Origin: Octopus sinensis
Taxonomy: Eukaryota
DNA length: 64,000 nucleotides
Assembly (NCBI RefSeq): GCF_006345805.1
Contig: NC_043004.1
Location: forward strand, 103,292,001 to 103,356,000
Direction: 5' to 3'
A program made the translations under genes and the position numbers. Numbering within the stretch: position 1 is the first letter of the stretch; every line of letters starts with the position of its first letter. Shown here in pieces: positions 4,253-42,600 of this stretch. A model generated the notes under the pieces. That model worked only from the letters and a program-made list of their open reading frames with translations, was not told where the DNA came from and searched no databases.

Positions 4253-4442
4253 GACATGTGCATGTATGCGTGTATCTATGTACGTATGTATACGTATATA
4301 AGTGTGTGTGTAGATATATATACGTATGTGTGTATGTATATGTATATGCATATATATGTGAGTGTGTGTAGATATACAGTACATGTATTTATATATATAA
4401 ATGTATGCATGTATATACATGTGTGTATGTGTGTGTGCGTGT

Positions 4443-4710
4443 GTGTGTGCAGGTGCGTGTGTGTGTGCAGGTGCGTGTGTGTGCAGGTGTGTGTGTGTGC
4501 AGGTGCGTGTGTGTGCAGGTGCGTGTGTGTGCAGGTGCGTGTGTGTGCAGGTGCGTGTGTGTGCAGGTGCGTGTGTGTGCAGTGCGTGTGTGTGCAGGTG
4601 CGTGTGTGTGCAGGTGCGTGTGTGTGCAGGTGCGTGTGTGTGCAGGTGCGTGTGTGTGCAGGTGCGTGTGTGTGCAGGTGCGGTGTGTGTGCAGGTGCGT
4701 GTGTGTGCAT
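4443..4710. repeat. Minisatellite (GTGTGTGCAGGTGC)n, about 19 units
   Basis: 14-bp unit embedded in a GT-rich tract. Confidence 0.95.
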
Positions 4711-4944
4711 CTTTTAAAAATTCAAGCTGGTCACTAACAAAGTTATAAAACTCTTTTATTTGAGTCGAAACAGTTCCAGGTATTTATGAATGTATGAACG
4801 AGGTAATGTATGAGCTTAAGTAAAGGTGTAAGCGTGTCGATATGCTTGCATTCAGAATACGGGTGTACATGTCTCTTTAGTACACGAATGTGTGTTTGTG
4901 CGCGTGTATCGATTTGCGTGTGTGATCTTTCTATATACATAGAG

Positions 4945-5088
4945 AATACCAAACTCATTCCCTATGGATACCGTATTTATTACAACGAGTGGCTTGTAAG
5001 CGTATCTAACGAGCGAAAGCGAGTTAGATACGTTTACAAGCCACGAGTTGTAATAAATACGGTATCCATAGGGAATGAGTTTGGTATT
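4945..5088. repeat. 144-bp near-perfect palindrome (70-bp arms, GAAA loop)
   Basis: Arms are complementary except for two tandem G.A/A.G mismatches in CGAG/CGAG context and one G.T. Confidence 0.95.
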
Positions 5089-5182
5089 TTATTTATTACA
5101 CACGAATAAACGACCATATTTTATTAACCCAATAACTAAATTCTTCACATCGTCTTGAAGCGCGCATGAATACAGCTTGATT

Positions 5183-5510
5183 TCACGTCAGTGACGTCAC
5201 AATGTGTAACTGTAAAAGATGTCCTGCCGCAGGAAGATAGTCCGACTTTATAGCGCTAAGTTTTCAGGTGAAATGACCCATAACATAATATTTTGTTAAC
5301 ATTCAAGTTCACGTTCAAGAAATACATAACACAGATTGAATCTTCAATAATTTTAATAATACTGAAACCTGTTTTCGAGTAGCAATGTCGGTCAATGGCT
5401 ACATTCTACCTGCTCGTGAAAGTAATGAATGAAGTTTAGTTGTAACTTATGAATGACAAAAGTAGTGCCGTCACCGTGACCTCGGGTCATCACCATGGAT
5501 TGACCAATCA
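5183..5510 (+). promoter_or_regulatory. Candidate SPTLC1 promoter region
   Basis: TCACGTCA (5183-5190) abuts the palindromic CRE GTGACGTCAC (5191-5200). NF-Y-type GACCAATCAG at 5502-5511. Non-repetitive and CpG-richer than its flanks. Candidate first coding exon ATGGCTACATTCTACCTGCTCGTGAAA|gtaatg (5395..5421, MATFYLLVK, phase 0). Confidence 0.35.
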
Positions 5511-5725
5511 GAAGCAGCGCTCGCAGTATCTGACATATGTTAGATACCAAAAATATCTCAAAGTGTTCTCACTCACATGTGTGTAATAAATGATTGTAAA
5601 TCATCTTTTTTTTCAGTCTTAGACGAGACATTCATATCCGCTAGACAGCTGATTTCTAAAAAAAGTATTTACGAGTTTTGCTACTAGTGCCACAGAATAA
5701 TATCCATTCTGTTATAGGCACAAGG

Positions 5726-5985
5726 GTGGAGGCGCGTGGCTTAGTGGTTAGGGTGTCAGCATCATGATCGTAAGATTGTGGTTTCGATTCCTGGACCGGG
5801 CAACGCGTTGTGTTCTTGAGCAAAACACTTCATTTCACGTTGCTCCAGTCCACTCAGCTGGCAAAAATGAGTAACGCTGCGATGGACTGGCGTCCGTCCA
5901 GCTGGGGAACACATACGTCATGGAAACCGGGAAACCGGGCCCATGAGCCTGGCTAGGCTTTAAAAGGGCGCATTTATTTATTATT
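5726..5985 (+). mobile_element. tRNA-derived SINE, family D (head H2 with CORE-like segment + V-domain-like tail T2)
   Basis: GTTGTGTTCTTGAGCAAAACACTT (CORE-like), GCGATGGACTGGCGTCCGTCCAG (V-domain-like). TSD TTATAGGCACAAGG (5712-5725, 5986-5999). Confidence 0.88.
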
Positions 5986-7300
5986 TTATAGGCACAAGGC
6001 CTGAAATTTTGTATACAACAGGTTCTTATTTTATCGACTCCGAAAAGATGAAAGGCTACGTCAACCACAGCAGCATTTGAACTCTGAATGTAAAGTCAAG
6101 TGAAATGCTAACGATTCTACAGAATAATCTCAGTTTCGAATTTTGGCACAAGGCCTGCAAGTTATTTTTGGTGGGGTGCGGTACGTCGATTATATCGACT
6201 CAGGAGCTCAACTCGTACTTATTTCATCGACTCCGAAAGGATGAAAGTCAAAGTCAAAGTCGATGAAATTTGAACTCAGAACGTTAAGATCGCCGAAATG
6301 TCGCTAAGCATTTTGCTTGGCGTGCTAACGATTCTACAGAGTAATATCGGTTTCAAATGTTGACTCAAGGCCAGCAGTATTTGGGGGGAGGGGACAAGTC
6401 GATTTCACCTGCCCCACTACTTGATTGGTACTCATTTTATCGACTCTGAAATCATGAAAGGCAAAATCGATCCCGGCAGAATTTGAACTCAGAATGTATA
6501 AGACGGACGAAATACCTATTTCTTTACTATCCACAAGGGGCTAAACACAGAGAGGACAAACAAGGACAGACAAACGGATTAAGCCGATTATATCGACCCC
6601 AGTGCGTAACAGGTACTTATTTAATCGACCCCGAAAGGATGAAAGACAAAGTCGACCTCAGCGGAATTTGAACTCAGAATGTAACGGCAGACGAAATACG
6701 GCTACGCATTTCGCCCGGCGTGCTAACGTTTCTGCCAGCTCGCCGCCTTATGATAACGTAGATTTAAAGACACCCATATATGCGCACATGTATACACATA
6801 CACATGTTTATGTGCACATATGCATATACACATCCAAACACAAGCACATATACATACACCAAAATATACAAGTACATTTGCTCTTAAAAAGCTGATTTTG
6901 AGGAAGTTAGCATAAAGGAGGAGTTAGAGAGAAGCACTGAGTATTAGCAAATGGTTCTGTGGAGGTGATACGTATGCTAACATGTGCATACGGTAATTAC
7001 GAACTTTTCAATTAAGCAGTGGAGGACAATTTAGCACTACGCATATCTGGATAAAGCCCCTGTATTAATCCCTAACGTCAACAACATCTATATTCTGGTT
7101 AAATAAAACATGAGGAAAAGAACGAAATGTTTCTTTACAATATTTGCCAGTTTATTTTGTCTCTTTGTCTTCTCTCCTGGTGCTGTATGAACATTTAATG
7201 TGGTTTTAGAGTCACGTTTTGACTGCTATTTTCAGCGTGGTGGTATCTTTTAGATACCCTAAATTATAATTTTAAATATATATATTTATATTTGTATATA

Positions 7301-9625
7301 CAGAGCAACCTCGGTTCTCGGCCATAATTTGTTCTGAAAGTCTGTTCTAAAACCGAATTGTTCTAGAACCGAATTGTTCTAGAACCGAATCATTTTTTCT
7401 TCCCATTATAATTAATGTAAAAGAGGTTAATTCGTTTCCAAGTACCGGATGACTGCTTTATATACATGCTTACACTATATATTTTAGTTTTAAAACGTTT
7501 ATTCAAACTGTAAATGACACACAAAGGTGTGTCATTTCTTAGAAGGAGAGTCTCCTTCCATAAAATAAAACTTCTGGTAACTGTCCTTCGGGTGTTTCTT
7601 CCCTTCTCTGTCTCTTTGGCTCAGATAAATCTTTCTCTGGGGTTTCTTTTCTTTGTTCTTGCAGTAAAACCTCTCCAAAATTAGTTGTTTTTGTCTGCTT
7701 TGTAAATTTTTTCTAAAATGAGAGATGGCATCGTCATTGAAAAGTTTTACTGCGCTGTTTGCTACCACTGTATCAGGGGGATATTTTACCAAAAGACTTT
7801 GCACATCACCCAATTTAGCACAAATTTCTTTGATTAAAGAACTTGGGACATCCTCCTTTCCTTCCTCCTCCTCAGAAGACATTTCCTCAGCCAAAGTCTT
7901 TTGCTGTTCATTTTGAAGGTGTACGAGTTCTTCGGTGGTAATCTCAGTATGGTGGTCTTCAACCAACTCTTCAATATCTTCACTGTCGACATCCAAGTCC
8001 TTAGTTTTTCCCATAGAAACAAGATTATCTACAATAGCAATTTCTTCGACAGCAGTAATACTTGTAGCTGTCTCAAACCCCTCAACGTTTCGTTCTGGTA
8101 CACAGTCTGGCCAAAGTTTCCTCCATGCTGAATTCATGGTTCTATAACTCACTTGGTTCCATGCATTATCAATCAGATTAACACAATTCAGGATATTGAA
8201 ATGATTTTTTCCAAAATTCTCTGAGAATTAACTGAGTGTCATTAGTGAGTTGGAAACACTTTCGAAACAGAGCTTTTGTGTAAATTTTTTTAAAGAATGC
8301 AATGACCTGTTGGTCCATTTGTTGTATTAGAGGAGTTGTGTTGGGTGGCGGGTATTTGACTTGAATAAAATCAAACTCTTCAACTAAATCATCCTCAAAA
8401 CCTGGAGGGTGAGCGGGAGCATCGTCTAACCTGAGAAGGCATTTTAGTGACAAATTTTTTTCTGGCAGATAATTTTTAACACGCGGGGCAAAAACTTCAT
8501 GAATCCACTCAATAAAAAATTGTCTGGTTACCCTAGCTTCCGTATTAGCCCACCACATAACAGGCAATTTACTCTTCATAACATTGTTTCTTTTGAAAAC
8601 CTTCGCATTATCGGAATGGTAAACAAGCAATGGCTTGACCTTGAAATCGCCACTTGCGTTGCAGTATTGCAAAAGAGTGAGTCTGTCTATCATTGGCATG
8701 TGCCCTGGCAACATTTTTTTCCTCCTCAGTAATATAGGTCCTATTTGGCATTCGTTTCCAAAATAATCCTGTTTCATCCCCGTTAAACACCTGTCGAGGG
8801 AGATAACCTCCTTCTTATTCAAACTGTAAACTCAATCACAAATTTCAGTTACTAAACTCAGTCACAAATTTCCTTGTTTGAACTCGCCGCCTTTCCAAGC
8901 CTAATTACATTGTGTATTTCACTTCGCTTCTTAGATTTCTCGAACTAGCCTCTACTAGCTTTGAATTCAAAATTATCGATTTCAGGACTTGTACCACGAG
9001 TTTTCTTTACTAGATCATTATAAATTTCTAACGCTTTCTCACAAATAAATGTTTCACTGATACTGTCACCGGCTAACCGTTTCTTATTTATTAAAATAAG
9101 GAATAACTTTTCCACTTCTTCGAATATCTTTGGTCTTTGTTTATTAATAACAGTCACTCCTTTTGCAACATCAGCTGCTTTTATCACTTCCTTATTTTTT
9201 AGAATAGTAGATATTGTCGATTTAGGCATACCGTACTGCACAGCGAGATCTGACCCACGAATGCCATTTTCGTGTTTTGCGATGATTTCTTCACTTCAAT
9301 TGTTTTTCTCTCAACTTTTCTTTTTCCATTACCAGTACCACTGCTAGCTTTCTTCGGATCCACGACTAAGGGCTAATGAAAAGAGAAAAAAAGGAACAAT
9401 ACAATAAAATTCGAAAAGAAAAGCAAAACACAACACACGATTGTATACAACACGACGGTCGACTCAGAAATGATATCGTTCGGGTTAACTCGGTTCGGCT
9501 CGATTTAGCAATGTTGTTCAAGAACCGAAATTTTATTTGATAACCCAGGCATTTTCATCTTGAATCTTCAATTCGAAAACCGATTTGTTCGACATGTGAT
9601 ACGTTCGAGAACCGAGATTGCTCTG
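7301..9625 (-). mobile_element. Full-length Tigger/pogo (Tc1-mariner superfamily) DNA transposon with a disrupted transposase
   Basis: 20-bp TIRs CAGAGCAA(C/T)CTCGGTTCTCG at 7301-7320 and 9606-9625 with TA on both flanks. Minus-strand fragments: CENP-B-type HTH (MPKSTISTILKNK), FNGDETGLFWK, LRLDDAPAH...PNTTPLIQQMDQQVI (36 residues between the second and third Asp). Confidence 0.95.
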
Positions 9626-10492: not shown

Positions 10493-10574
10493 TATTATAC
10501 ATACTATACACAAACATATATAACTCTACAAGATAAATTATGTTATGTTGTATTTTTTGTGTTTCACATTGAAG

Positions 10575-10676
10575 GTTATCTCCCTGCGGTTCTGTTTCGA
10601 AATAATACTGGTCGGTTTGCTCATCAAACTGCTTCTGAAGAGTCGACACTTTGATCAGATTCAGCTCACTGAAGAG
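10575..10676 (+). CDS. SPTLC1: SPTLC1-like exon (human exon 2 equivalent, N-terminal TM helix): [34 protein letters not shown]
   Basis: Acceptor cacattgaag, donor GAG|gtaagt, 102 nt, phase 0-0. Hydrophobic helix aligns to human [23 protein letters not shown]...LTVK. Confidence 0.85.
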
Positions 10677-11139
10677 GTAAGTCTTTCAACCTATCACTTT
10701 CACAACTTTGATGACTATACGACACACTTTTTTCCCTTTAAAAATGTCTCAAAAAATCGTTCCAGGCCCAATTGTGAAGTTAGGTCTCCCATATACTTTA
10801 ATGAACTAAGAACTTTTTTTCTGGATACGCAATTTGAAATTGGAATGCATCTTATTTTCCCATGCGCCTTTAATTGGCGTCAATTACGGTATTTCTCTTA
10901 CTCGGAGTACAATACAGTTACTGTTGGGTGTTTAGACTTTTGATTAAAGGGTCGATGGGTCGTTGTGAGTGGGGCCAAGAGAACATGATTGACTGCATGC
11001 TTTTGGGGCATGTGTGGTTAAGAAATTCGCTTTGCAACCACATGGTTTTGGGTTCAGTCCTACTGTGCGGCACTTTGGGCAAGTATCTTTCCTTATAGCC
11101 CCGAGCCAACCAATGACCGTTGTCTTATGAGTAAAAATG

Positions 11140-25200: not shown

Positions 25201-28200
25201 TCTGGTTGAAATACACCGAAAAATGGCGACACAGCAGTCAAAAAATCGTTAAAAATAGGGATTTTCATAGGAAAAATGCACCTTTTTGAAATTGTGTATT
25301 TTATGCAACTCCATAACCTCCCATCTAAGTTTTCAGAAAAACCGAGGAATTTACACAGGTACTCTTAAGTATATTATTATGTGTTCTTCCAACCCCGTCA
25401 CCACCTTCCCTACCACCACCAAGTCTAAGGCGTATTACTATTTTACAACCTTCATTCACAGTGATATGGGGGCGTCTTTCGCAATCACACAAGGATTAAG
25501 AGTGTCGCGCAGCAATTTCCATTTCTTTCGACACAACGACATGGACCATCTTGAAGAATTACTTATCGAACACCAAAAATGGGAAAAACAAGTAAGTCAT
25601 CTTCGTTTTTCTTTTGATAATATTCTCCCGATACAAGGCGGTGAGCTGACAGAAACGTTAGCACGCCGGGCGAAATGCTTAGCGGTGTTTTGTCTGTCTT
25701 TACGTTCTGAGTTCAAATTCCGCCGAGGTCGACTTTGCCTTTCATCCTTTCGGGGTCGATTAAATAAGTACCAGTTACGCACTGGGGTCGATATAATCGA
25801 CTTAATCCGTTTGTCTGTCCTTGTTCGTCCCCTCTGTTTAACCCCTTGTGGGTAGTAAAGAAACAGGTATTTTGTCTGTCTTTAAGTTCACACTTCAAAT
25901 TCCGCCGAGGTCAACTTTGCCTTTCACTCTTTCAGGGTCGATAAATTAAGTACCAGTTGTGTACTGGGGTCGATCTGAGCGACTGGGTCCCTCTCCCAAA
26001 ATTTCGGGCCTTGTGTCTAGAGTAGAAAAGAATATTCTCCCGATAGGGTCGAATGAAATGCTGTAATGATTTTTTAAATATCTTTTACATAGTATTGTGA
26101 CAACAAATATTGTTAGTAGATTGAGAGAATCGTTAGGGCTTCAGACAAAATGCTTTGGAAATATTTAGTATAGTTCTTTTTTCGTGCTAGGTTCAAACCT
26201 TACCATGGTTAACTTTGCTTTTATCCCTTTGTCTGATGCACAGGACGTATTTTATTAGAGGAATAAAAGATACAAAAATCTACTAGACGCAACGTACCAG
26301 AAAAATTATACAAATTGGGAATAAAGTGCCAATATCATTTAACGATTAACATACTTTGTGCAAGTAGAGAAGCTCAAGAAGTTACCCCGTCAACTGCTCG
26401 GGCCTTACTTTTTCCATAGATCTAATGTGATACATATAATGAGATGGCTCTTGAGAGCATATCTCGAAAAAAATATAAGGCCAGACTGTACAAGTGATTT
26501 TACCAGTTTTCAACAAGCAAATAGTCTACATCACATTCAGAAAGATATCATAACACAAATGATGTCGGGCTTGAAGAAGTCTTAACAGATAATGTCGTTG
26601 AGTTAGGGAAGGTTTATCTAACGAAGAGCTGATACTATTAGAACAAAAGTACAAAAAAAATATTGCTAACGAGTCGGCACTTGTGGAGGAAGGTCTGTAA
26701 GTTTTTGTTGATAACCACCCTAATCATGAACGAAACCTAAAAATTACAAGAGGCGTCAACAATGACTTTAGTTCCTATACTGAGCTATATGATGATACGA
26801 CATAAACATCAAGCAATTTTGGATAAGTTCTTCGTCCCTCAAGCAGATGTTGGTTATGGTAAAGCATAAGTCAAAAGATAGTATCCATCATCCATCATCC
26901 TCCCAGCAACTCTCATTCTATCACCACCCCTCAGACAATAGTCAACTTTTTATGGGGTACGATTTTATGGTCCTTATTCATTCCCGAACATATTTCACTT
27001 GAACTATTTTTATGTTTAAAATTATACGGGGTAACTTTAGAAATTGCTTTCTTTATGTAACACATATATATTTCTGGCATTCATACTTGTAATGCAATAA
27101 ATACCATTTATGCCCATTATCACTTTGTTATTAATTAAAATTCTAATCTTATGTTATCTAAATAACTAATCCTCACACAGAACCCGAAGAAGGCTAAATT
27201 GACCAAAAAGTTAATCGTCGTCGAAGCACTGTACCTCAACATTGGAGATATATGTCCTTTACCAAGAATTGTGGAGTTCCGAGACATTTACAAAGTACGT
27301 GTGATGGTTGATGAAAGCTTTAGCCTGGGTATCCTGGGAAAAACAGGCCGTGGCATAACTGAACACTACGGACTTTCAGTAAGTCATAATTCCAATGTTT
27401 TCAACAAACCATCGAACATATATATTGAATAATCCTTTTTATAAATACACATTTAATTTCGCTCTGAAATAATACTGAGGTCATGAACTCGAGTAAGAAA
27501 CGGTTTAACTCACTGAGCAGGTGTTCCAACAATACTGAAGCATAGTGAAACCGGCACAGGTAAAAACAGCGCTCCTTCAGTTCTCAGTTTATAGATGGCT
27601 ATAAGCTCTCTCCATTAATTATTTCAGAGGAGGAATGAAACAAATTTTTTGATTATTTAATGTAGGCGCAGGCATAGCTGTGTGGTTAAGAATCTCGTTT
27701 TGCAACCACAAGGTTTCGGGTTCAGTTCCACTGTGCGGCACCTTGGGCCAGAGTTTTCTACTGCAGCCCTGAGTCCACCAATGCTTTGTGAGTGAATTTA
27801 GTTGATGGAAACTGTATGGAAACTTTTGATATACTTCAATAGGTTGAAACTTACGAAAGCTATTTTAACCAATCAGAATGCAGCTTAGGCGTCAAAGTTT
27901 CATGAACGTCGTTACACAGTTGACACTGAACGTGCTTATTCATAGAAACATTTTAACCAATCACAAACACCGATAGAGGATTCGGCTATAAACAGAATGT
28001 GAGAAATATTTGACACTACGAACCGTAGTCCCACCTTAAATATTTTAAAATTGATTTCATTCAAAAATATTTAAGGCGAGACTATGGTTTGTAGTATCAG
28101 ATGTATCTCAACATCTGATTGCAGCCGAATCCTTTATCGGTGTCACTGATTGGTTAACAAGCTTCTATGAAAAAGCGCAATCAATGTCAACTGTTTCCAC

Positions 28201-30673: not shown

Positions 30674-31044
30674 CGTGCGTGCGTGTATATAATATATACA
30701 GAGAAAAAAGTCGTCAGAATTTTGGAAAAAAATCCTCGTATTTCTTCATTATTATTAGCTCTTTCGTTCCTCTCTCGAACTTGTCAAATACAATTTTGTG
30801 AATGTACACACAGCTTGTTTATTCATATAAAGCAGTTGCTTTTATTTGTGGGGTGGGTTAGAAGAGAACAAGCTGTTTGTACATTTACAAAATTGTATTT
30901 GACAAGTTCTAGAGAGGAAAGAAAGCGCTAATAATAATGAAGAAATACAAGGATTTTTTTCCAAAATTCTGACGACTTTTTTCCTCAATATTCAGTTCTA
31001 TACATCACATCTAACACACTCTATACATACATATATGTATATAT

Positions 31045-31118
<74 letters not shown>

Positions 31119-32069
31119 GAAGGTTTGAAAATGTAATGGGCTTTTAGAGATGTTTATTCACTTGACCAGTTTCACTTTTTTATAAAAAGATTGTCAAAAG
31201 TAAAATGTAAGGCTTTGTATAAGCTAATACAAAGCCTTACATTTTACTTTTGACAATCTTTTTCTAAAAAAGTGAAACCGGTCAAGTCAATAAACATCTC
31301 TAAAAGCTCATTGCATTTTCAAACCTTCTTTCATATATATTTTCACTCGTGCGATACCTTACAACATTTACTTTGTTATATATATATAAAAATATATAAA
31401 AACACTACGCTCATTATTATATTAGGGGATGTTACAATTTTATTTTTAAAAAAGCATTATTGCCATCGAGTTTTTTTTATATTTTATCTTATTTTATTTT
31501 ATTCATTTTCCAGAGAATGGGAAGTCTCGGTTATGCTTATTCTGCCTCACAACCTCCGTTGTGTGTTGGGGCCATCATACAAGTGATCAATATTTTAGAG
31601 GGGAGTAACGGTAAGTTGTTTTACAGATATTTGATGAAAAGCGAATGGAGAAGCTCAATCAAAGATCGAAGTCTGCATTTTATTTCATTTTTATATAATT
31701 TAATTAGTGGAGGAAATGCAGTGCCCAGAACCCCTTCAAGGACCGCTAATAACACTGATTGCAAAGCGGAAGTTATCCTCAGACCAGCCAGAATGCTTGC
31801 AACAGTTTGTATTTCGTTAAAGGCACCCAATGGTGGTGTCAATTAAGTGACGGGCTAAGTTTACTGCACATGTACTGAAGCTGTCATTCGGGCAAGTTTC
31901 CCTACAGTTTCCGCCGACTAGATTCCACTCACCAGGCTTTGGTCGACCCCTGGCTGTGGTAGAAGATGCTTGCCCAAGTTACTGCATAGTAAAATTTAAC
32001 CCGAAACTAATGTCAGGAAGTGAACTTCTTAAAAACGATACATGCTTCTCTACCTGTCTGGTACAGCCT

Positions 32070-39600: not shown

Positions 39601-42600
39601 AAAAAAAAGCAGCCTATAAACGATAATTCCTTCACTGTATATGCGTGAATTAAGAACCTTCTTCTGCAACCTCAAATAGATCAGAGCTTTGTGAATGGAA
39701 GACGGACACCGTTCTCTGAACTGTATTATAATACTTAACTTGACTTGACTTCGATGCGATCTCGTTTCAGTCGTCTTTGACTAATGAGTGAATTTTTATT
39801 TTTGTGATGAAAATTCAATAACAGAAATAATAGAAAATTTTAATGTGTCCAATGAGCTGGCGTTAAGATGTGATCAACCAATCAGCGGTCTATGGTTGTC
39901 TATAATAGTTTCTAACAAGCAACTAGATAGTTTTATATATTTTTTCACAAGTGCTGGGCGATTCCAACTCGTGATACAAACACAGACTGCGTTTTAAGTC
40001 AGATCAAACATTTTAATGTCTAACGACGATTTTACCGCTTTGATTGTTGACAATGGATCCGGCATTTCCAAAGCTGGATTTGCAGGAGCTAATTCGCCCT
40101 GTGTTGTATTTCCCTCCATCGTTGGTAGACCAAGACATCAAAGTACCATGGTCGGTATGGCTCACAAAGATTTCTACGTTGGAAACGAAGCCCAGAATAA
40201 AAGAGGCATCCTTTCTTTGAAATACCCCATTGAGCATGGTGTTGTTACCAACTGGGATGATATGGAGAAGATCTGGGAATATACCTTCTACAATGAGCTC
40301 CATGTTTCTCCCGAAGAACAACCTATTCTCCTCACAGAATCTCCTCTTAATCCTAAAGTTAACAGAGAAAAGATGACAGAGATCATATTCGAGACCTTCA
40401 AAGCTTCTGCAATGTATGTTGCAGTTCAATCTGTGTTGTCTCTGTATGCTTCTGGTCGTACCCTGGGTACTGTTATTGACTCCGGCGATGGAGTCACGCA
40501 CACGGTTCCCGTCTATGAAGGTTATGGCCTTCCCCATGCGGTGAACCGTTTGAATTTGGCTGGTCATGATCTTACTGATTACCTCGAGAAGATAATTACT
40601 GAGCGTGGTTACTTATTCACCACATCTGCCGAGAGAGAAATTGTTCGTGATGTCAAGGAGAAATTATGTTATGTTGCAGCTGACTTCGAAGAGGAGCTGG
40701 TTACAGCTGCCACTTCCGCTTCCCATGAAAAGAGCTACGAATTACCTGATGGTCAAATTATCACCATTGGTAATGAAATGTTTAGGTGTCCAGAATCTCT
40801 ATTTCAACCTTCCTTCTTGGGTATGGAATCTGATGGTATCCATAGGATCACATACGATTCCATTATGAAATGCGATGTTGATATCAGGAAAGATTTGTTC
40901 GCCAACATTGTCTTGTCCGGAGGTAGCACTATGTTTCCGGGCATTGCCGAAAGAATGCATAAAGAAATCACTTCCTTTAATCTTGGAACCTCGAAAGTCA
41001 AAATTGATGCTCCCCCAGCACGAAAATATTCCGCCTGGATAGGCGGCTCTATTTTAGCTTCCTTCTCTTCTTTCCAGCAAATGTGGATTGAAAAGGAAGA
41101 ATATATTGATTCCGGACCGTCTATTGTCCACCGCAAATGTTTCTAGGAAGTTTTTCTTTTTAGCCCTTTTGCAACAGCAAAATCGCAGAGTAAAATTTGA
41201 AAAGTATGAATTTCATCGATTGCATGCTTTGTTGCCATAGACTCATTAACAAAGCTCCCTCTTTGTGCTTGTGTTTGTGGAATCATTTTATTTTAGAAAA
41301 AAAAACTGGTTCATAATTTCGGAAAGCAACTCTAAATGTGCAAGAATAAGTTGGTAACATGGAACATATATCCGGTACGAAGGTTGTATGTCTCTTGAAA
41401 ACTAGACTAAGTTGTTAAAGATTTGGAAAAATTATTTTTAAATGACTTAATTTGTACTTTACGAAAAAGGACTATAAACGCACAGCAACCAAGATAATGA
41501 AAAACCACTTTTAACTGAAAAACCAACTGAAACATTGAATTACCTGAACTCCACTATATTGGTGATTTTTAATTTGGTTTAATTGTAAAACAAAGAATTT
41601 GCGCCGTAACGCAAAATTGATTGCAGCGAGGTTTCATGACACCAAGTGAAATGTCACAATTTAATTGTCTTTTTTTTAGTCCGTCTGGCCTTTCAGGTAC
41701 ATTTAGAGTAGCAACTTTTTCAAACATTCCGACTAAGTCTCTGGACGGATAATTCTCCTTTCAAAGTCCAACGAAATTCCAAACGTTTTATAGACAATAT
41801 TGAACGTGCGATGAGTAGGTTTCAATAACTAAAAGAAAAACATTTAATGCGTAGCTTAAGTCAAATATAGACAGTTTCCCCTCCTCAAAATTTTAATGTG
41901 TTTATGCTTTTCAGTTGTACACTTTTGGGTCTGTTATATAAACTTATATAAGGGCAGCAAACTCAAGGATTACCCTTGGAGGTACACATTTAAGCTACGC
42001 CACTGTAAATATGTGTGCGTGGCCTCCTTCAATTCTGAGTCCTGCGGTTTTTCTGAGCTTTGGAATTTCCTTCCAGGGCACTCTTCTGACCAAGGTCTTT
42101 CTGAAAAAAGGCAAGTCGTTGCCCCAGCATGGAAGAGTTCCCTCCTCATTGAACCGACGAAGTGCAATGGAAAAGCAAGGCCGATAAAGAATGACTCTTG
42201 CATCGTCATAAGAGTTGTCTTCAAAACGAAAAGCTACATTATAGCATCCTGTCCAACGTCCTGACAGTGCTTCCAATACATCACCTTGGATAGGTGCATT
42301 TTTATCGATCCCTGAAAGACAAAGTTGGCTTCGGTGAGATTTAAAATCGGAGTTTCAAAAGAAATATCGCAAGGCATTATATCTGATGCTCTGACGAGTC
42401 AACCAGCAGTCGCCCATGCATACCGGCCTCCCCTCTCCACGCCACCAGTGTTATCGAAGGGAAAGGCAAAGGCCGATACAGCTTGACACCTGTGACGTCG
42501 CAACTCATTTCTACAGCTGAGTGAACTGGAGCAACGTGAAATAGAGCTCAAGAACGCAGCCCGGTCCGGATTCGAACTCACAACCTCGCGATCGTAAGCT

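What the first reader, a model, noticed from the sequence alone, without database searches (positions are those of the whole stretch)
4945..5088. 144-bp hairpin with two tandem sheared G.A motifs and a GCGAAAGC apex, next to the putative SPTLC1 promoter
Seen: 70-bp arms whose only non-Watson-Crick positions are CGAG/CGAG at 4986-4989/5044-5047 and 5010-5013/5020-5023, plus one G.T; loop C(GAAA)G. Established: 5'-CGAG/CGAG forms stable tandem G.A pairs, and d(GCGAAAGC) is an exceptionally stable mini-hairpin. As I recall, Crypton-related Eulor-type repeats have similar CGAG-flanked hairpin apices. Inference: the same mismatch motif occurring twice is unlikely from random decay and suggests a structure recognised as folded ssDNA or RNA. 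Candidates are a tyrosine-recombinase or HUH element terminus, or a structured RNA. It lies about 100 bp upstream of the CRE-containing region.
Basis: partly seen in the sequence, partly recalled or inferred. Interest (0 to 1): 0.7.

Follow-up and report, generated by a model that had tools for sequence, protein, structure and literature searches.

The report
Transposon end hairpin with G·A pairs
The 144-base hairpin is real and is the conserved end-structure of a roughly 660-base mobile element in the octopus genome; related copies keep both its base-pairing and its odd G·A mismatches, so the DNA is probably recognised as a folded single strand, and the "promoter" beside it belongs to the same element.

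Summary
Window 4945-5088 (Octopus sinensis) is a 144-nt palindrome. Its only non-Watson-Crick stem positions are two CGAG/CGAG tandem G·A sites and one G·T, and its loop is C(GAAA)G.

It is not a lone structure. Three metagenome contigs hold five related hairpins (51-90% identical among all copies) that keep the fold: 35 of 63 pairs show compensatory changes. They also keep same-orientation CGAG at three fixed sites, spaced about 32 and 24 bp. One of these hairpins was not selected by my search key.

Conservation extends beyond the palindrome. On the minus strand the unit spans about 4931-5593: a 13-nt inverted repeat (5591-5579 and 5103-5091), then the hairpin just after the right repeat, then a CTCTAT tail. 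No target-site duplication is visible. The repeat pairs co-vary between copies.

This architecture matches Helentron/HLE2-type rolling-circle elements, but the stem is about ten times longer than usual. No Rep/helicase partner could be sought here, so membership is unproven.

The first coding exon of the gene, a divergent SPTLC1 paralogue, lies 5.4 kb away. The Crypton/Eulor link is unsupported.

Verdict: a new variant of a known kind, of moderate interest.

The parts
4945..5088 (+). 144-nt hairpin (G·A version on the + strand). Left arm 4945-5014, loop GAAA 5015-5018, right arm 5019-5088.
   Evidence: The profile of five family hairpins matches here at E=5e-38.
4986..4989 (+). CGAG block B, left half. 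It pairs with CGAG at 5044-5047 to give tandem G·A/A·G.
   Evidence: The same block is at the same position in L025, L042 and L021 hairpin 2.
5044..5047 (+). CGAG block B, right half.
5010..5013 (+). CGAG block C, left half, next to the apex. It pairs with CGAG at 5020-5023.
   Evidence: It is also present in L021 hairpin 2, which was not selected by the apex search key.
5020..5023 (+). CGAG block C, right half.
4954..4957 (+). Site A, left half. Here it reads CTCA and pairs perfectly with TGAG at 5076-5079. In the other four family hairpins this position is a third CGAG/CGAG block or a one-transition derivative of one.
   Evidence: Alignment columns 11-12/135-136 and the per-copy mismatch lists.
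5076..5079 (+). Site A, right half (TGAG).
5091..5103 (-). Right 13-nt inverted repeat of the unit (minus strand GTGTGTAATAAAT), 2 nt from the hairpin.
   Evidence: Perfect 13/13 inverted repeat with 5579-5591 (I2). The exact 10-mer ATTTATTACA occurs only four times in 64 kb, all within 4975-5591. The same repeat lies directly before the hairpin in L025, L042 and L021.
5579..5591 (-). Left 13-nt inverted repeat (minus strand ATTTATTACACAC). Conservation with other copies begins at its TTT.
   Evidence: The repeat pairs co-vary between copies (window ...A..CACAC; L025/L042 ...C..CAC(AC)CC; L021 ...CACTAC).
5446..5593 (-). Conserved 5' module of the unit. It includes CCAAT (5504-5508, + strand) and the palindrome TGACCTCGGGTCA (5477-5489).
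   Evidence: blastn match to L025 149-200, alignment A3, and an nhmmer profile hit at E=5e-41 that is shared with L025 54-201 and L042 237-411.
5184..5200 (.). CRE-like CACGTCAGTGACGTCAC (TGACGTCA at 5192-5199) inside the unit body.
   Evidence: Collinear TGACGTCA pairs are present in L025 212-252.
4931..4944 (-). Tail after the hairpin (minus strand CTCTATGTATATAG). CTCTAT follows five of the six family hairpins, and L042 reads TTCTAT.

Best explanation
The hairpin is the terminal stem-loop of a non-autonomous DNA transposon of about 660 bp. The element is inserted on the minus strand at about 4931-5593 of this Octopus sinensis window.

Read on the minus strand, the element runs as follows. 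It starts with TTT plus a 13-nt inverted repeat (5591-5579). Next comes a body carrying CCAAT and TGACGTCA motifs, then the matching inverted repeat (5103-5091). Two bases later comes the 144-nt hairpin, and then a short CTCTAT tail. No target-site duplication is visible. This is the layout described for Helentron/HLE2 rolling-circle (HUH Rep-helicase) elements and their non-autonomous HINE derivatives, except that the stem is about 70 bp instead of 5-10 bp.

The inferred mechanism is as follows. During transposition one strand becomes single-stranded, the palindrome snaps back, and the folded end marks where the transposase stops or cleaves. Three CGAG blocks (C:G, two sheared G·A pairs, G:C) at fixed spacing make the two strands fold differently: purine G·A blocks on one strand and pyrimidine C·T/T·C internal loops on the other. 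This could give a strand-specific, shape-specific mark.

Shown here: family membership of the hairpin, conserved pairing, conserved G·A sites, the unit architecture and the absence of a TSD. Inferred: rolling-circle mobilisation, recognition by a protein, and which strand is the active one.
For: - Related copies exist. L025, L042 and L021 were found by the apex scan followed by blastn.
- With four sequences and the window's own structure, 96.6% of cells pair. 27 of 66 pairs changed on both sides and only 1 pair varies on one side. No shuffle out of 500 reached these values, and slid controls gave about 35% paired.
- With five sequences, 35 of 63 pairs carry compensatory changes.
- L021 hairpin 2 is only 51-61% identical to the others and was not picked by the search key. 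It still has 60 of 69 Watson-Crick pairs and G·A/A·G doublets at all three sites, spaced 31 and 24 bp.
- Across the five complete hairpins and three sites, 13 of 15 instances are G·A-type and 2 are Watson-Crick (TC opposite GA). Deviations inside the motif are mostly single transitions at the CpG (CAAG, TGAG).
- On the G·A strand there are 7 G·T wobbles against 1 A·C. That strand also folds 1.3-7.2 kcal/mol better in all five hairpins.
- Architecture: the window has a perfect 13-nt inverted repeat. The same repeat sits directly before the hairpin in every copy and co-varies with its partner. The conserved 5' module is shared by three copies.
- L025 holds two units head-to-tail, the first hairpin's tail abutting the next unit's left repeat. 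Tandem arrangement is reported for Helitron-type elements.
- Published definitions match: 12-16-nt inverted repeats at both ends, a stem-loop after the right repeat, T-rich ends and no TSD.
- The sister species O. vulgaris is reported to carry Helitron-order families, some recently active.
- Structural chemistry: the CGAG block has been solved by NMR. d(GCGAAAGC) melts at 76.5 C, against 33 C for a T-loop variant and 39 C for the RNA version.
Against: - No Rep/helicase-encoding partner with these ends was found, and none could be sought. The octopus genome itself is not searchable with these tools.
- The insertion site could not be shown to be T-T, and no empty site was recovered.
- The 3' end (CTCTAT, or CTCTATATAG) is not a T-run like published HINE ends.
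- Published subTIR sequences do not resemble ATTTATTACAC.
- The stem is about ten times longer than any described Helentron or HINE palindrome.
- No central tandem repeat or microsatellite is present.
- In the canonical HLE2 orientation the G·A-bearing strand is the bottom strand. Either the element is of the 'reverse' type (stem-loop at the 5' end) or the bottom strand is the one that folds.
- Only six hairpins (one of them half-deleted, another a partial left arm at L021 2875-2945) from four contigs support the family. Four of them share the apex by construction of the search.
- The source organism of the metagenome contigs is unknown.
Confidence: 0.5

Rival explanations
1. It is the end-structure of a mobile element of another or an undescribed class, for example a tyrosine-recombinase (Crypton-like) element or a different HUH enzyme. 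Such an element would also leave no target-site duplication and would use the long G·A-punctuated hairpin as its recognition site.
For: No TSD is visible. The ends do not match published Helentron subTIRs or T-run termini. The stem is far longer than in known Helitron-like elements.
Against: The combination of a short inverted-repeat pair with a stem-loop just outside the right repeat is specifically the HLE2 layout. The one paper read on Cryptons and Eulors does not mention hairpins or palindromes. No recombinase gene lies nearby in the window.
Confidence: 0.2
2. The hairpin is a structured RNA module (a long-hairpin small-RNA precursor, an ADAR substrate or another non-coding RNA) carried by the repeat. 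On this view, selection acts on the RNA fold: G·U wobbles are tolerated, and GNRA loops and tandem G·A are classic RNA motifs.
For: There are 7 G·T against 1 A·C non-canonical pairs on one strand. The apex is C(GAAA)G in four copies. Compensatory changes run throughout the stem. The unit carries promoter-like CCAAT and CRE motifs.
Against: - No Rfam family reaches its threshold. The weak hits are generic long-hairpin plant miRNA models scoring 58 bits or less against gathering scores of 44-140.
- The GNRA loop is not conserved: L021 hairpin 2 has a TTT triloop on the G·A strand.
- The promoter-like motifs lie upstream of the hairpin only on the strand that would give the C·U/U·C version.
- The fixed position beside an inverted repeat at the element's end points to a DNA-level role.
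- r(GCGAAAGC) is far less stable than the DNA form.
Confidence: 0.15
3. It is an ordinary foldback element or MITE of a cut-and-paste (DDE) transposon. Its TA duplication would be hidden inside the palindrome (AA-TA-CC...GG-TA-TT), and the mismatches would be inherited quirks of the parent's inverted repeats.
For: The outermost palindrome bases allow a TA/TA reading. Tc1-mariner and MITE families are abundant in octopus. A pogo-like transposase remnant lies 2.5 kb away.
Against: - Conservation between copies continues asymmetrically beyond the palindrome, with CTCTAT on one side and GTGTGTAATAAAT plus about 500 bp on the other.
- The hairpin always sits beside the right repeat of a larger unit.
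- Neutral inheritance would not keep 97% pairing at 51-79% identity while holding three mismatched sites.
- Control palindromes in the same window behave differently.
Confidence: 0.07
4. It is a relic of the hairpin telomere of a single-stranded DNA virus (parvovirus-like), integrated in the genome.
For: The length of about 145 nt, and the mismatched purine bubbles in the stem, recall the terminal hairpins of parvoviruses. This is from my own knowledge and was not tested.
Against: No capsid or replicase open reading frame lies in the window. No family member was found in 2.9 million viral contigs, either by the apex or by the CGAG grammar. The grammar matches there are period-12 coding repeats. 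The hairpin is embedded in a repeat unit with its own inverted repeats.
Confidence: 0.03

Closest known systems
Helentron / HLE2 non-autonomous elements (HINE, DINE-1-like, oyster Cg_HINE)
   Same: Inverted repeats of 11-16 nt near both ends, a palindrome or stem-loop just after the right repeat, an element that begins with Ts, no target-site duplication, head-to-tail tandem copies, and known occurrence in molluscs.
   Different: The stem is about 70 bp rather than 5-10 bp and carries three conserved CGAG (tandem G·A) blocks. The 3' end is not a T-run. The unit has no central tandem repeat or microsatellite. The repeat sequence is unlike published subTIRs. No Rep-helicase partner has been identified.
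IS200/IS605 subterminal imperfect hairpins (bacterial HUH TnpA)
   Same: A working analogy only. In both, an imperfect palindrome at the element's end would be recognised as a folded single strand, the non-Watson-Crick positions being part of the signal and only one strand being active. This is from my own knowledge.
   Different: Those elements are prokaryotic, with stems of about 10 bp, single mismatches or extrahelical bases, and a different enzyme. No sequence relationship was tested or is expected.
CGAG-block DNA hairpins (AUTS2 promoter region) and d(GCGAAAGC) mini-hairpins
   Same: The same local chemistry: C:G, sheared G:A, A:G, G:C blocks, and a GAAA loop closed by G-C/C-G.
   Different: Those are short purine-rich repeats or 8-mers studied as oligonucleotides. 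Here single blocks are set at about 32- and 24-bp intervals in a long Watson-Crick stem of a mobile element.
Canonical Helitron 3' hairpin
   Same: A hairpin close to the 3' end of a rolling-circle transposon, thought to act as a termination signal.
   Different: A canonical Helitron has 5'-TC and 3'-CTRR ends, a 16-20-nt palindrome about 11 bp from the end, insertion between A and T, and no inverted repeats. None of these end motifs is present here.

Membership tests
Helentron / HLE2 (HINE) | Short (about 11-16 nt) terminal or subterminal inverted repeats at both ends | tested here: met
   The window has a perfect 13/13 pair at 5579-5591 and 5091-5103. Homologous pairs in L025, L042 and L021 co-vary.
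Helentron / HLE2 (HINE) | Palindrome or stem-loop located after the right inverted repeat, at the 3' end | tested here: met
   The hairpin starts 2-4 nt after the right repeat in every copy. It is about ten times longer than described examples.
Helentron / HLE2 (HINE) | Insertion between T and T, T-runs at the termini, no target-site duplication | tested here: inconclusive
   No TSD was seen in three flank pairs, and the 5' end starts TT(T). The 3' end is CTCTAT(ATAG) rather than a T-run, and no empty site was recovered. The L042 repeat R (1-241 and 1082-1322) is ambiguous as an empty site.
Helentron / HLE2 (HINE) | Autonomous partner encoding Rep-helicase (with or without an endonuclease) that shares the same termini | not testable with these tools
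   The octopus genome cannot be searched by DNA here, and no Rep/helicase ORF is present in the window or in the three contigs.
Helentron / HLE2 (HINE) | Sequence similarity of the subTIR to known families | tested here: not met
   None of the 15 published subTIRs resembles ATTTMTTACAC. This is not required for membership, because subTIRs differ between families.
Canonical Helitron (HLE1) | 5'-TC and 3'-CTRR ends, a 16-20-nt hairpin about 11 bp from the end, insertion between A and T | tested here: not met
   The ends read TTTATTAC... and ...CTCTAT(ATAG), with no CTRR.
MITE / foldback of a DDE transposon | Element boundaries at the outer ends of the inverted repeats, flanked by a target-site duplication | tested here: not met
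   Conservation continues asymmetrically beyond the palindrome, and there are no direct repeats at the unit ends. A TA hidden inside the palindrome cannot be formally excluded.
Crypton / Eulor5-6 | Sequence similarity to Crypton or Eulor termini, with a tyrosine-recombinase partner | not testable with these tools
   No Repbase or Dfam library is on hand. The review linking Eulor5/6 to Cryptons does not mention hairpins or palindromes.
miRNA / hairpin-RNA precursor (Rfam families) | Match to a curated covariance model at its gathering score | tested here: not met
   There were no hits at gathering score. The best sub-threshold hits (58 bits against a threshold of 119) are plant long-hairpin models.
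CGAG block / sheared tandem G·A motif | 5'-pyrimidine-G-A-purine-3' on both strands, in tandem opposition | tested here: met
   Every G·A doublet sits in CGAG, TGAG or CGAA, matching the context solved by NMR. The sheared geometry itself was not measured here.

The most novel reading that the evidence does not exclude
This may be a previously undescribed family of eukaryotic mobile elements, present in an octopus and in unidentified organisms from three metagenomes. Its terminal hairpin of about 140 nt would be kept by selection as a folded single strand. Three evenly spaced sheared-G·A 'CGAG blocks' would act as a shape code that tells the two strands apart for the mobilising enzyme. That would be a eukaryotic counterpart of the imperfect hairpins read by bacterial HUH transposases. 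The occasional conversion of one block to a perfect TC/GA pair would then be a footprint of mismatch correction on the folded intermediate.
Probability: 0.3. Interest if true: 0.75.

Novelty: new variant of a known kind. Interest (0 to 1): 0.55.

Why it matters
How eukaryotic rolling-circle transposases recognise their ends is poorly understood. The 3' hairpin is thought to matter by shape rather than by sequence. A family whose terminal hairpin carries conserved non-Watson-Crick blocks, with dense compensatory evolution around them, offers a natural mutational series for testing structure-specific and strand-specific recognition.

The finding also corrects an annotation risk. The CCAAT/CRE 'promoter' upstream of this SPTLC1-like gene is transposon cargo. 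If it drives the gene at all, it would be an exapted element and not an ancestral promoter.

Finally, a near-perfect 70-bp palindrome persists in the genome. Its symmetry-breaking G·A blocks may be relevant to how long palindromes escape deletion. One related copy (L025 1226-1302) has in fact lost one arm.

Tried and rejected
- Searching the translated hairpin (an open frame through the palindrome) against 5.8 billion predicted proteins, to catch other copies inside spurious ORFs, found nothing.
- An exact apex 20-mer has no match in viral contigs.
- The apex 18-mer has 48 hits in prokaryotic genomes and at least 120 in metagenomes. All but three are unrelated short hairpins or tandem repeats. 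The arm-extension test gives 28 paired positions or fewer for them, against 42-72 for the family.
- My first CGAG-grammar pattern used the wrong spacing (N19) and gave 7 chance hits. The corrected N20 pattern gave at least 119 viral hits, but they are period-12 coding repeats with non-complementary arms, not hairpins.
- The orthologous locus in Argonauta hians (L170) has no copy of the hairpin or of the unit, and its upstream region is alignable only at exons and common repeats.
- Orthologues of the gene in other Octopus species are not in the protein collection, and the canonical SPTLC1 could not be looked up. An empty-site test was therefore not possible.
- A full-text search for the repeat and apex sequences returned only unrelated primers.
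- Rfam gave nothing at threshold.
- Chance was rejected as the origin of the G·A pattern.
- A template-switch or local-duplication origin, suggested by TATTTATTACA occurring both in the arm (4974-4984) and after the hairpin (5090-5100), was dropped once the flank copy proved to be the unit's conserved inverted repeat.
- A simple satellite monomer was rejected because the two consecutive units in L025 have unrelated bodies.

Full report

Yes. Window 4945-5088 is a 144-nt palindrome with 70-nt arms and a GAAA loop closed by C5014-G5019. The only non-Watson-Crick stem positions are these:
- G4987·A5046 and A4988·G5045
- G5011·A5022 and A5012·G5021
- G5000·T5033

Each G·A doublet lies inside CGAG on both arms. 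In other words, the dinucleotide GA is repeated directly where a true palindrome would have it inverted (CGAG opposite CTCG).

As single-stranded DNA the region folds at -70.6 kcal/mol, against -11.5 +/- 2.6 for shuffles (z = -22). In a simulation of five random substitutions in a perfect 70-bp palindrome, two G·A/A·G doublets arose in about 1 of 10^6 trials. Three other long palindromes in the same window (27916-28194, 30703-30983, 31107-31340) carry only isolated mismatches of mixed types. The hairpin is single-copy within the window.

**2. Where are we?**

An intronless actin-like gene in the window (40016-41146) maps exactly to Octopus sinensis chromosome CM016866.1 of assembly GCA_006345805.1. 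The 'SPTLC1' of the finding is a divergent paralogue. It is 52% identical to the canonical O. sinensis SPTLC1 and 78% identical to an Argonauta hians protein. Its first coding exon lies at about 10545-10685, which is 5.4 kb downstream of the hairpin. A pogo-like transposase remnant lies between the two.

**3. Related copies**

The octopus genome cannot be searched by DNA with these tools. A translated-hairpin protein search found nothing.

A scan of metagenome contigs for the 18-nt apex returned at least 120 loci. blastn and an arm-extension test showed that three of them hold true relatives:
- L025 (FXBE01013309.1)
- L042 (Ga0256826_1061703)
- L021 (OFBE01000919.1)

L021 also carries a second, much more diverged hairpin (2047-2187) and a partial third copy. 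L025 carries a second copy that has lost its left arm and apex. The source organisms are unknown. The contigs have 36-37% G+C and no recognisable genes.

**4. What is conserved**

All five complete hairpins fold into one long stem.

*Pairing.* On the four-sequence alignment, using the window's own structure:
- 96.6% of cells pair.
- 27 of 66 pairs changed on both sides, and only one pair varies on one side.
- No shuffle out of 500 reached these values.
- Sliding the partner by 1-3 columns drops pairing to about 35%.

With the fifth hairpin added, 35 of 63 consensus pairs show compensatory change. Pairwise identities are 51-90%.

*Mismatch sites.* The internal loops sit at three fixed places, about 32 and 24 bp apart. 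They are almost always CGAG on both arms.
- Site A is G·A-type in L025, L042 and both L021 hairpins. Three of these carry single transitions within the motif (CAAG, TGAG, CGAA). In the window, site A is a perfect CTCA/TGAG pair.
- Site B is G·A-type in the window, L025, L042 and L021 hairpin 2. In L021 hairpin 1 it is of the Watson-Crick type.
- Site C is G·A-type in all copies.

Four of these copies were retrieved with the apex as the key, so site C and the GAAA loop are conserved in them by construction. L021 hairpin 2 was not selected that way. It has all three blocks but a different apex (GGC-TTT-GCC on the G·A strand). The blocks and their spacing are therefore the family feature, and the GCGAAAGC mini-hairpin is not.

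*Strand bias.* On the G·A strand the remaining non-canonical pairs are 7 G·T against 1 A·C. That strand folds 1.3-7.2 kcal/mol better than its complement in all five hairpins. This is suggestive, on small numbers, that one particular strand is the one that folds.

**5. The hairpin is the end of a larger unit**

Alignments with flanks show that conservation runs beyond the palindrome. On one side is CTCTAT. On the other is GTGTGTAATAAAT, followed by several hundred bases.

In the window the 13-nt sequence at 5091-5103 has a perfect inverted partner at 5579-5591. The exact 10-mer occurs nowhere else in the 64 kb outside 4975-5591.

The same arrangement recurs in L025, L042 and L021: left repeat, body, right repeat, hairpin 2-4 nt later, then a tail (CTCTAT in five of the six hairpins, TTCTAT in L042). 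The repeat pair changes in step between copies:
- ATTTATTACACAC in the window
- ATTTCTTACAC(AC)CC in L025 and L042
- TTATTACACTAC in L021

A 150-nt module next to the left repeat is shared by the window (5593-5446, minus strand), L025 and L042. It contains the CCAAT box and the palindrome TGACCTCGGGTCA. TGACGTCA pairs follow collinearly.

No direct repeats flank the unit. In L025 two units lie head to tail, the first hairpin's tail abutting the next unit's left repeat.

**6. What it most likely is**

The published definition of Helentron/HLE2 rolling-circle elements and their non-autonomous HINE derivatives reads: inverted repeats of 11-16 nt at both ends, a stem-loop after the right repeat, T-rich ends, insertion between two Ts, no target-site duplication, and frequent tandem copies. 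The octopus unit meets the two architectural criteria and shows no duplication.

Several points remain open or do not fit:
- The T-T target could not be verified.
- The 3' end is not a T-run.
- The repeat sequence is unlike published ones.
- The stem is about ten times longer than any described.
- The decisive criterion, a Rep-helicase partner with the same ends, is not testable here.

The sister species O. vulgaris is reported to hold Helitron-order families with recent activity. I therefore call this a probable Helentron-type non-autonomous element with an unusual terminal hairpin, at a confidence of about 0.5. The broader statement, that it is the conserved and structurally constrained end-module of a mobile element family, is much firmer.

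**7. How it may work (inference)**

Rolling-circle transposition exposes one strand. On that strand a 70-bp snap-back would form at once and could mark the end for the transposase.

The CGAG block is a solved DNA motif: C:G, two cross-strand-stacked sheared G:A pairs, then G:C. Its complement gives C·T/T·C internal loops. d(GCGAAAGC) melts at 76.5 C, a T-loop variant at 33 C and the RNA version at 39 C. The two strands of this element would therefore fold into clearly different objects, which gives a simple means of strand discrimination.

In the canonical HLE2 orientation the G·A strand is the bottom strand. Either the element is of the described 'reverse' type, with the stem-loop at the 5' end, or the complementary strand is the folded one. 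This remains open.

Two site instances read TC opposite GA, always on the same arm. These are what short-patch correction of a G·A doublet within a folded intermediate would produce. That is speculation.

**8. Rivals**

| Explanation | Confidence |
|---|---|
| Another TSD-less class of element (tyrosine recombinase or another HUH enzyme) | 0.2 |
| An RNA-level function | 0.15 |
| An ordinary foldback/MITE with a hidden TA duplication | 0.07 |
| A relic of a single-stranded-DNA virus telomere | 0.03 |
| Chance | negligible |

- The RNA reading has the wobble bias and the compensatory changes in its favour. Against it are the absence of any Rfam family at threshold, the non-conserved loop, and the fixed position at an element end.
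- The MITE reading is contradicted by the asymmetric conserved flanks.
- The viral-relic reading lacks viral genes and has no match in viral contigs.
- The Crypton/Eulor recollection found no support in the literature held here and could not be tested against Repbase.

**9. Verdict**

The motif is non-random, the single-strand reading is favoured, and an HUH-type terminus is the best candidate. The promoter context and the Eulor link are not supported.
- Novelty: a new variant of a known kind.
- Interest: moderate (0.55).

Noticed in passing
window 5714-5995: A SINE-like insert of about 258 bp with tRNA-type A/B-box-like motifs (TGGCTTAGTGG, GGTTTCGATTCC). It is flanked by a perfect 12-bp direct repeat, ATAGGCACAAGG (5714-5725 and 5984-5995), a likely target-site duplication. 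ARAGORN calls no tRNA there.
   Followed up: partly
window 10545-49449 and 40016-41146; L170: The gene is a divergent SPTLC1 paralogue, 52% identical to the canonical O. sinensis SPTLC1 on the same chromosome. An intronless actin-like gene lies between its exons. The SPTLC1-like/actin pairing is also present in Argonauta hians.
   Followed up: partly
window 5184-5200; L025 212-252 and 844-925; L021 470-545, 1590-1640, 1920-1950: ACGT-core motifs (TGACGTCA, GACGTG, TGACGTAA) are dense in the bodies of all related units. Several published mite HINE subterminal repeats are also ACGT-N5-6-ACGT palindromes. These 'CRE' sites may therefore be transposon protein-binding sites rather than CREB sites.
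   Followed up: no
L025 1226-1302: A family hairpin that has lost exactly its left arm and apex, compared with L021 838-954. This is a one-arm deletion of the kind expected from palindrome instability.
   Followed up: partly
L042 1-241 and 1082-1322: A 241-bp direct repeat (97.5% identical). The first copy abuts the left end of a family unit, and the second lies 60 bp before the right repeat and hairpin. It could be an empty-site pair or captured flank, and it remains unresolved.
   Followed up: partly
window 4441-4709: A 16-bp minisatellite, GTGTGTGTGCAGGTGC, in 16.7 copies at 96% match, about 235 bp from the hairpin.
   Followed up: no
window 7532-9241 (minus strand): A remnant of a pogo/Tigger-like transposase, split over three ORFs. 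It matches DDE_1 at 3e-27 and gives a weak CENP-B_N hit.
   Followed up: partly
window 27916-28194, 30703-30983, 31107-31340: Three other long palindromes (arms of 117-136 nt, 79-95% complementary), probably foldback or MITE-like repeats. They were used here only as controls for mismatch patterns.
   Followed up: partly
L004 50-247; L124, L128, L132, L137, L148 and others: The 18-mer AACGAGCGAAAGCGAGTT recurs in unrelated prokaryotic DNA. It occurs in a 90-bp tandem repeat in one metagenome contig, and on several contigs in some MAGs (Fretibacterium, Burkholderiales, an Enterobacteriaceae bin). This suggests bacterial repeat families built around the same mini-hairpin.
   Followed up: no
viral contigs L178-L296: The pattern ACGAG-N20-CGAG-N5-9-CGAG-N20-CGAGT is more than 15 times as frequent in viral contigs as the same pattern with N19. 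The excess comes from coding tandem repeats of period 12 (and 9), not from hairpins.
   Followed up: yes
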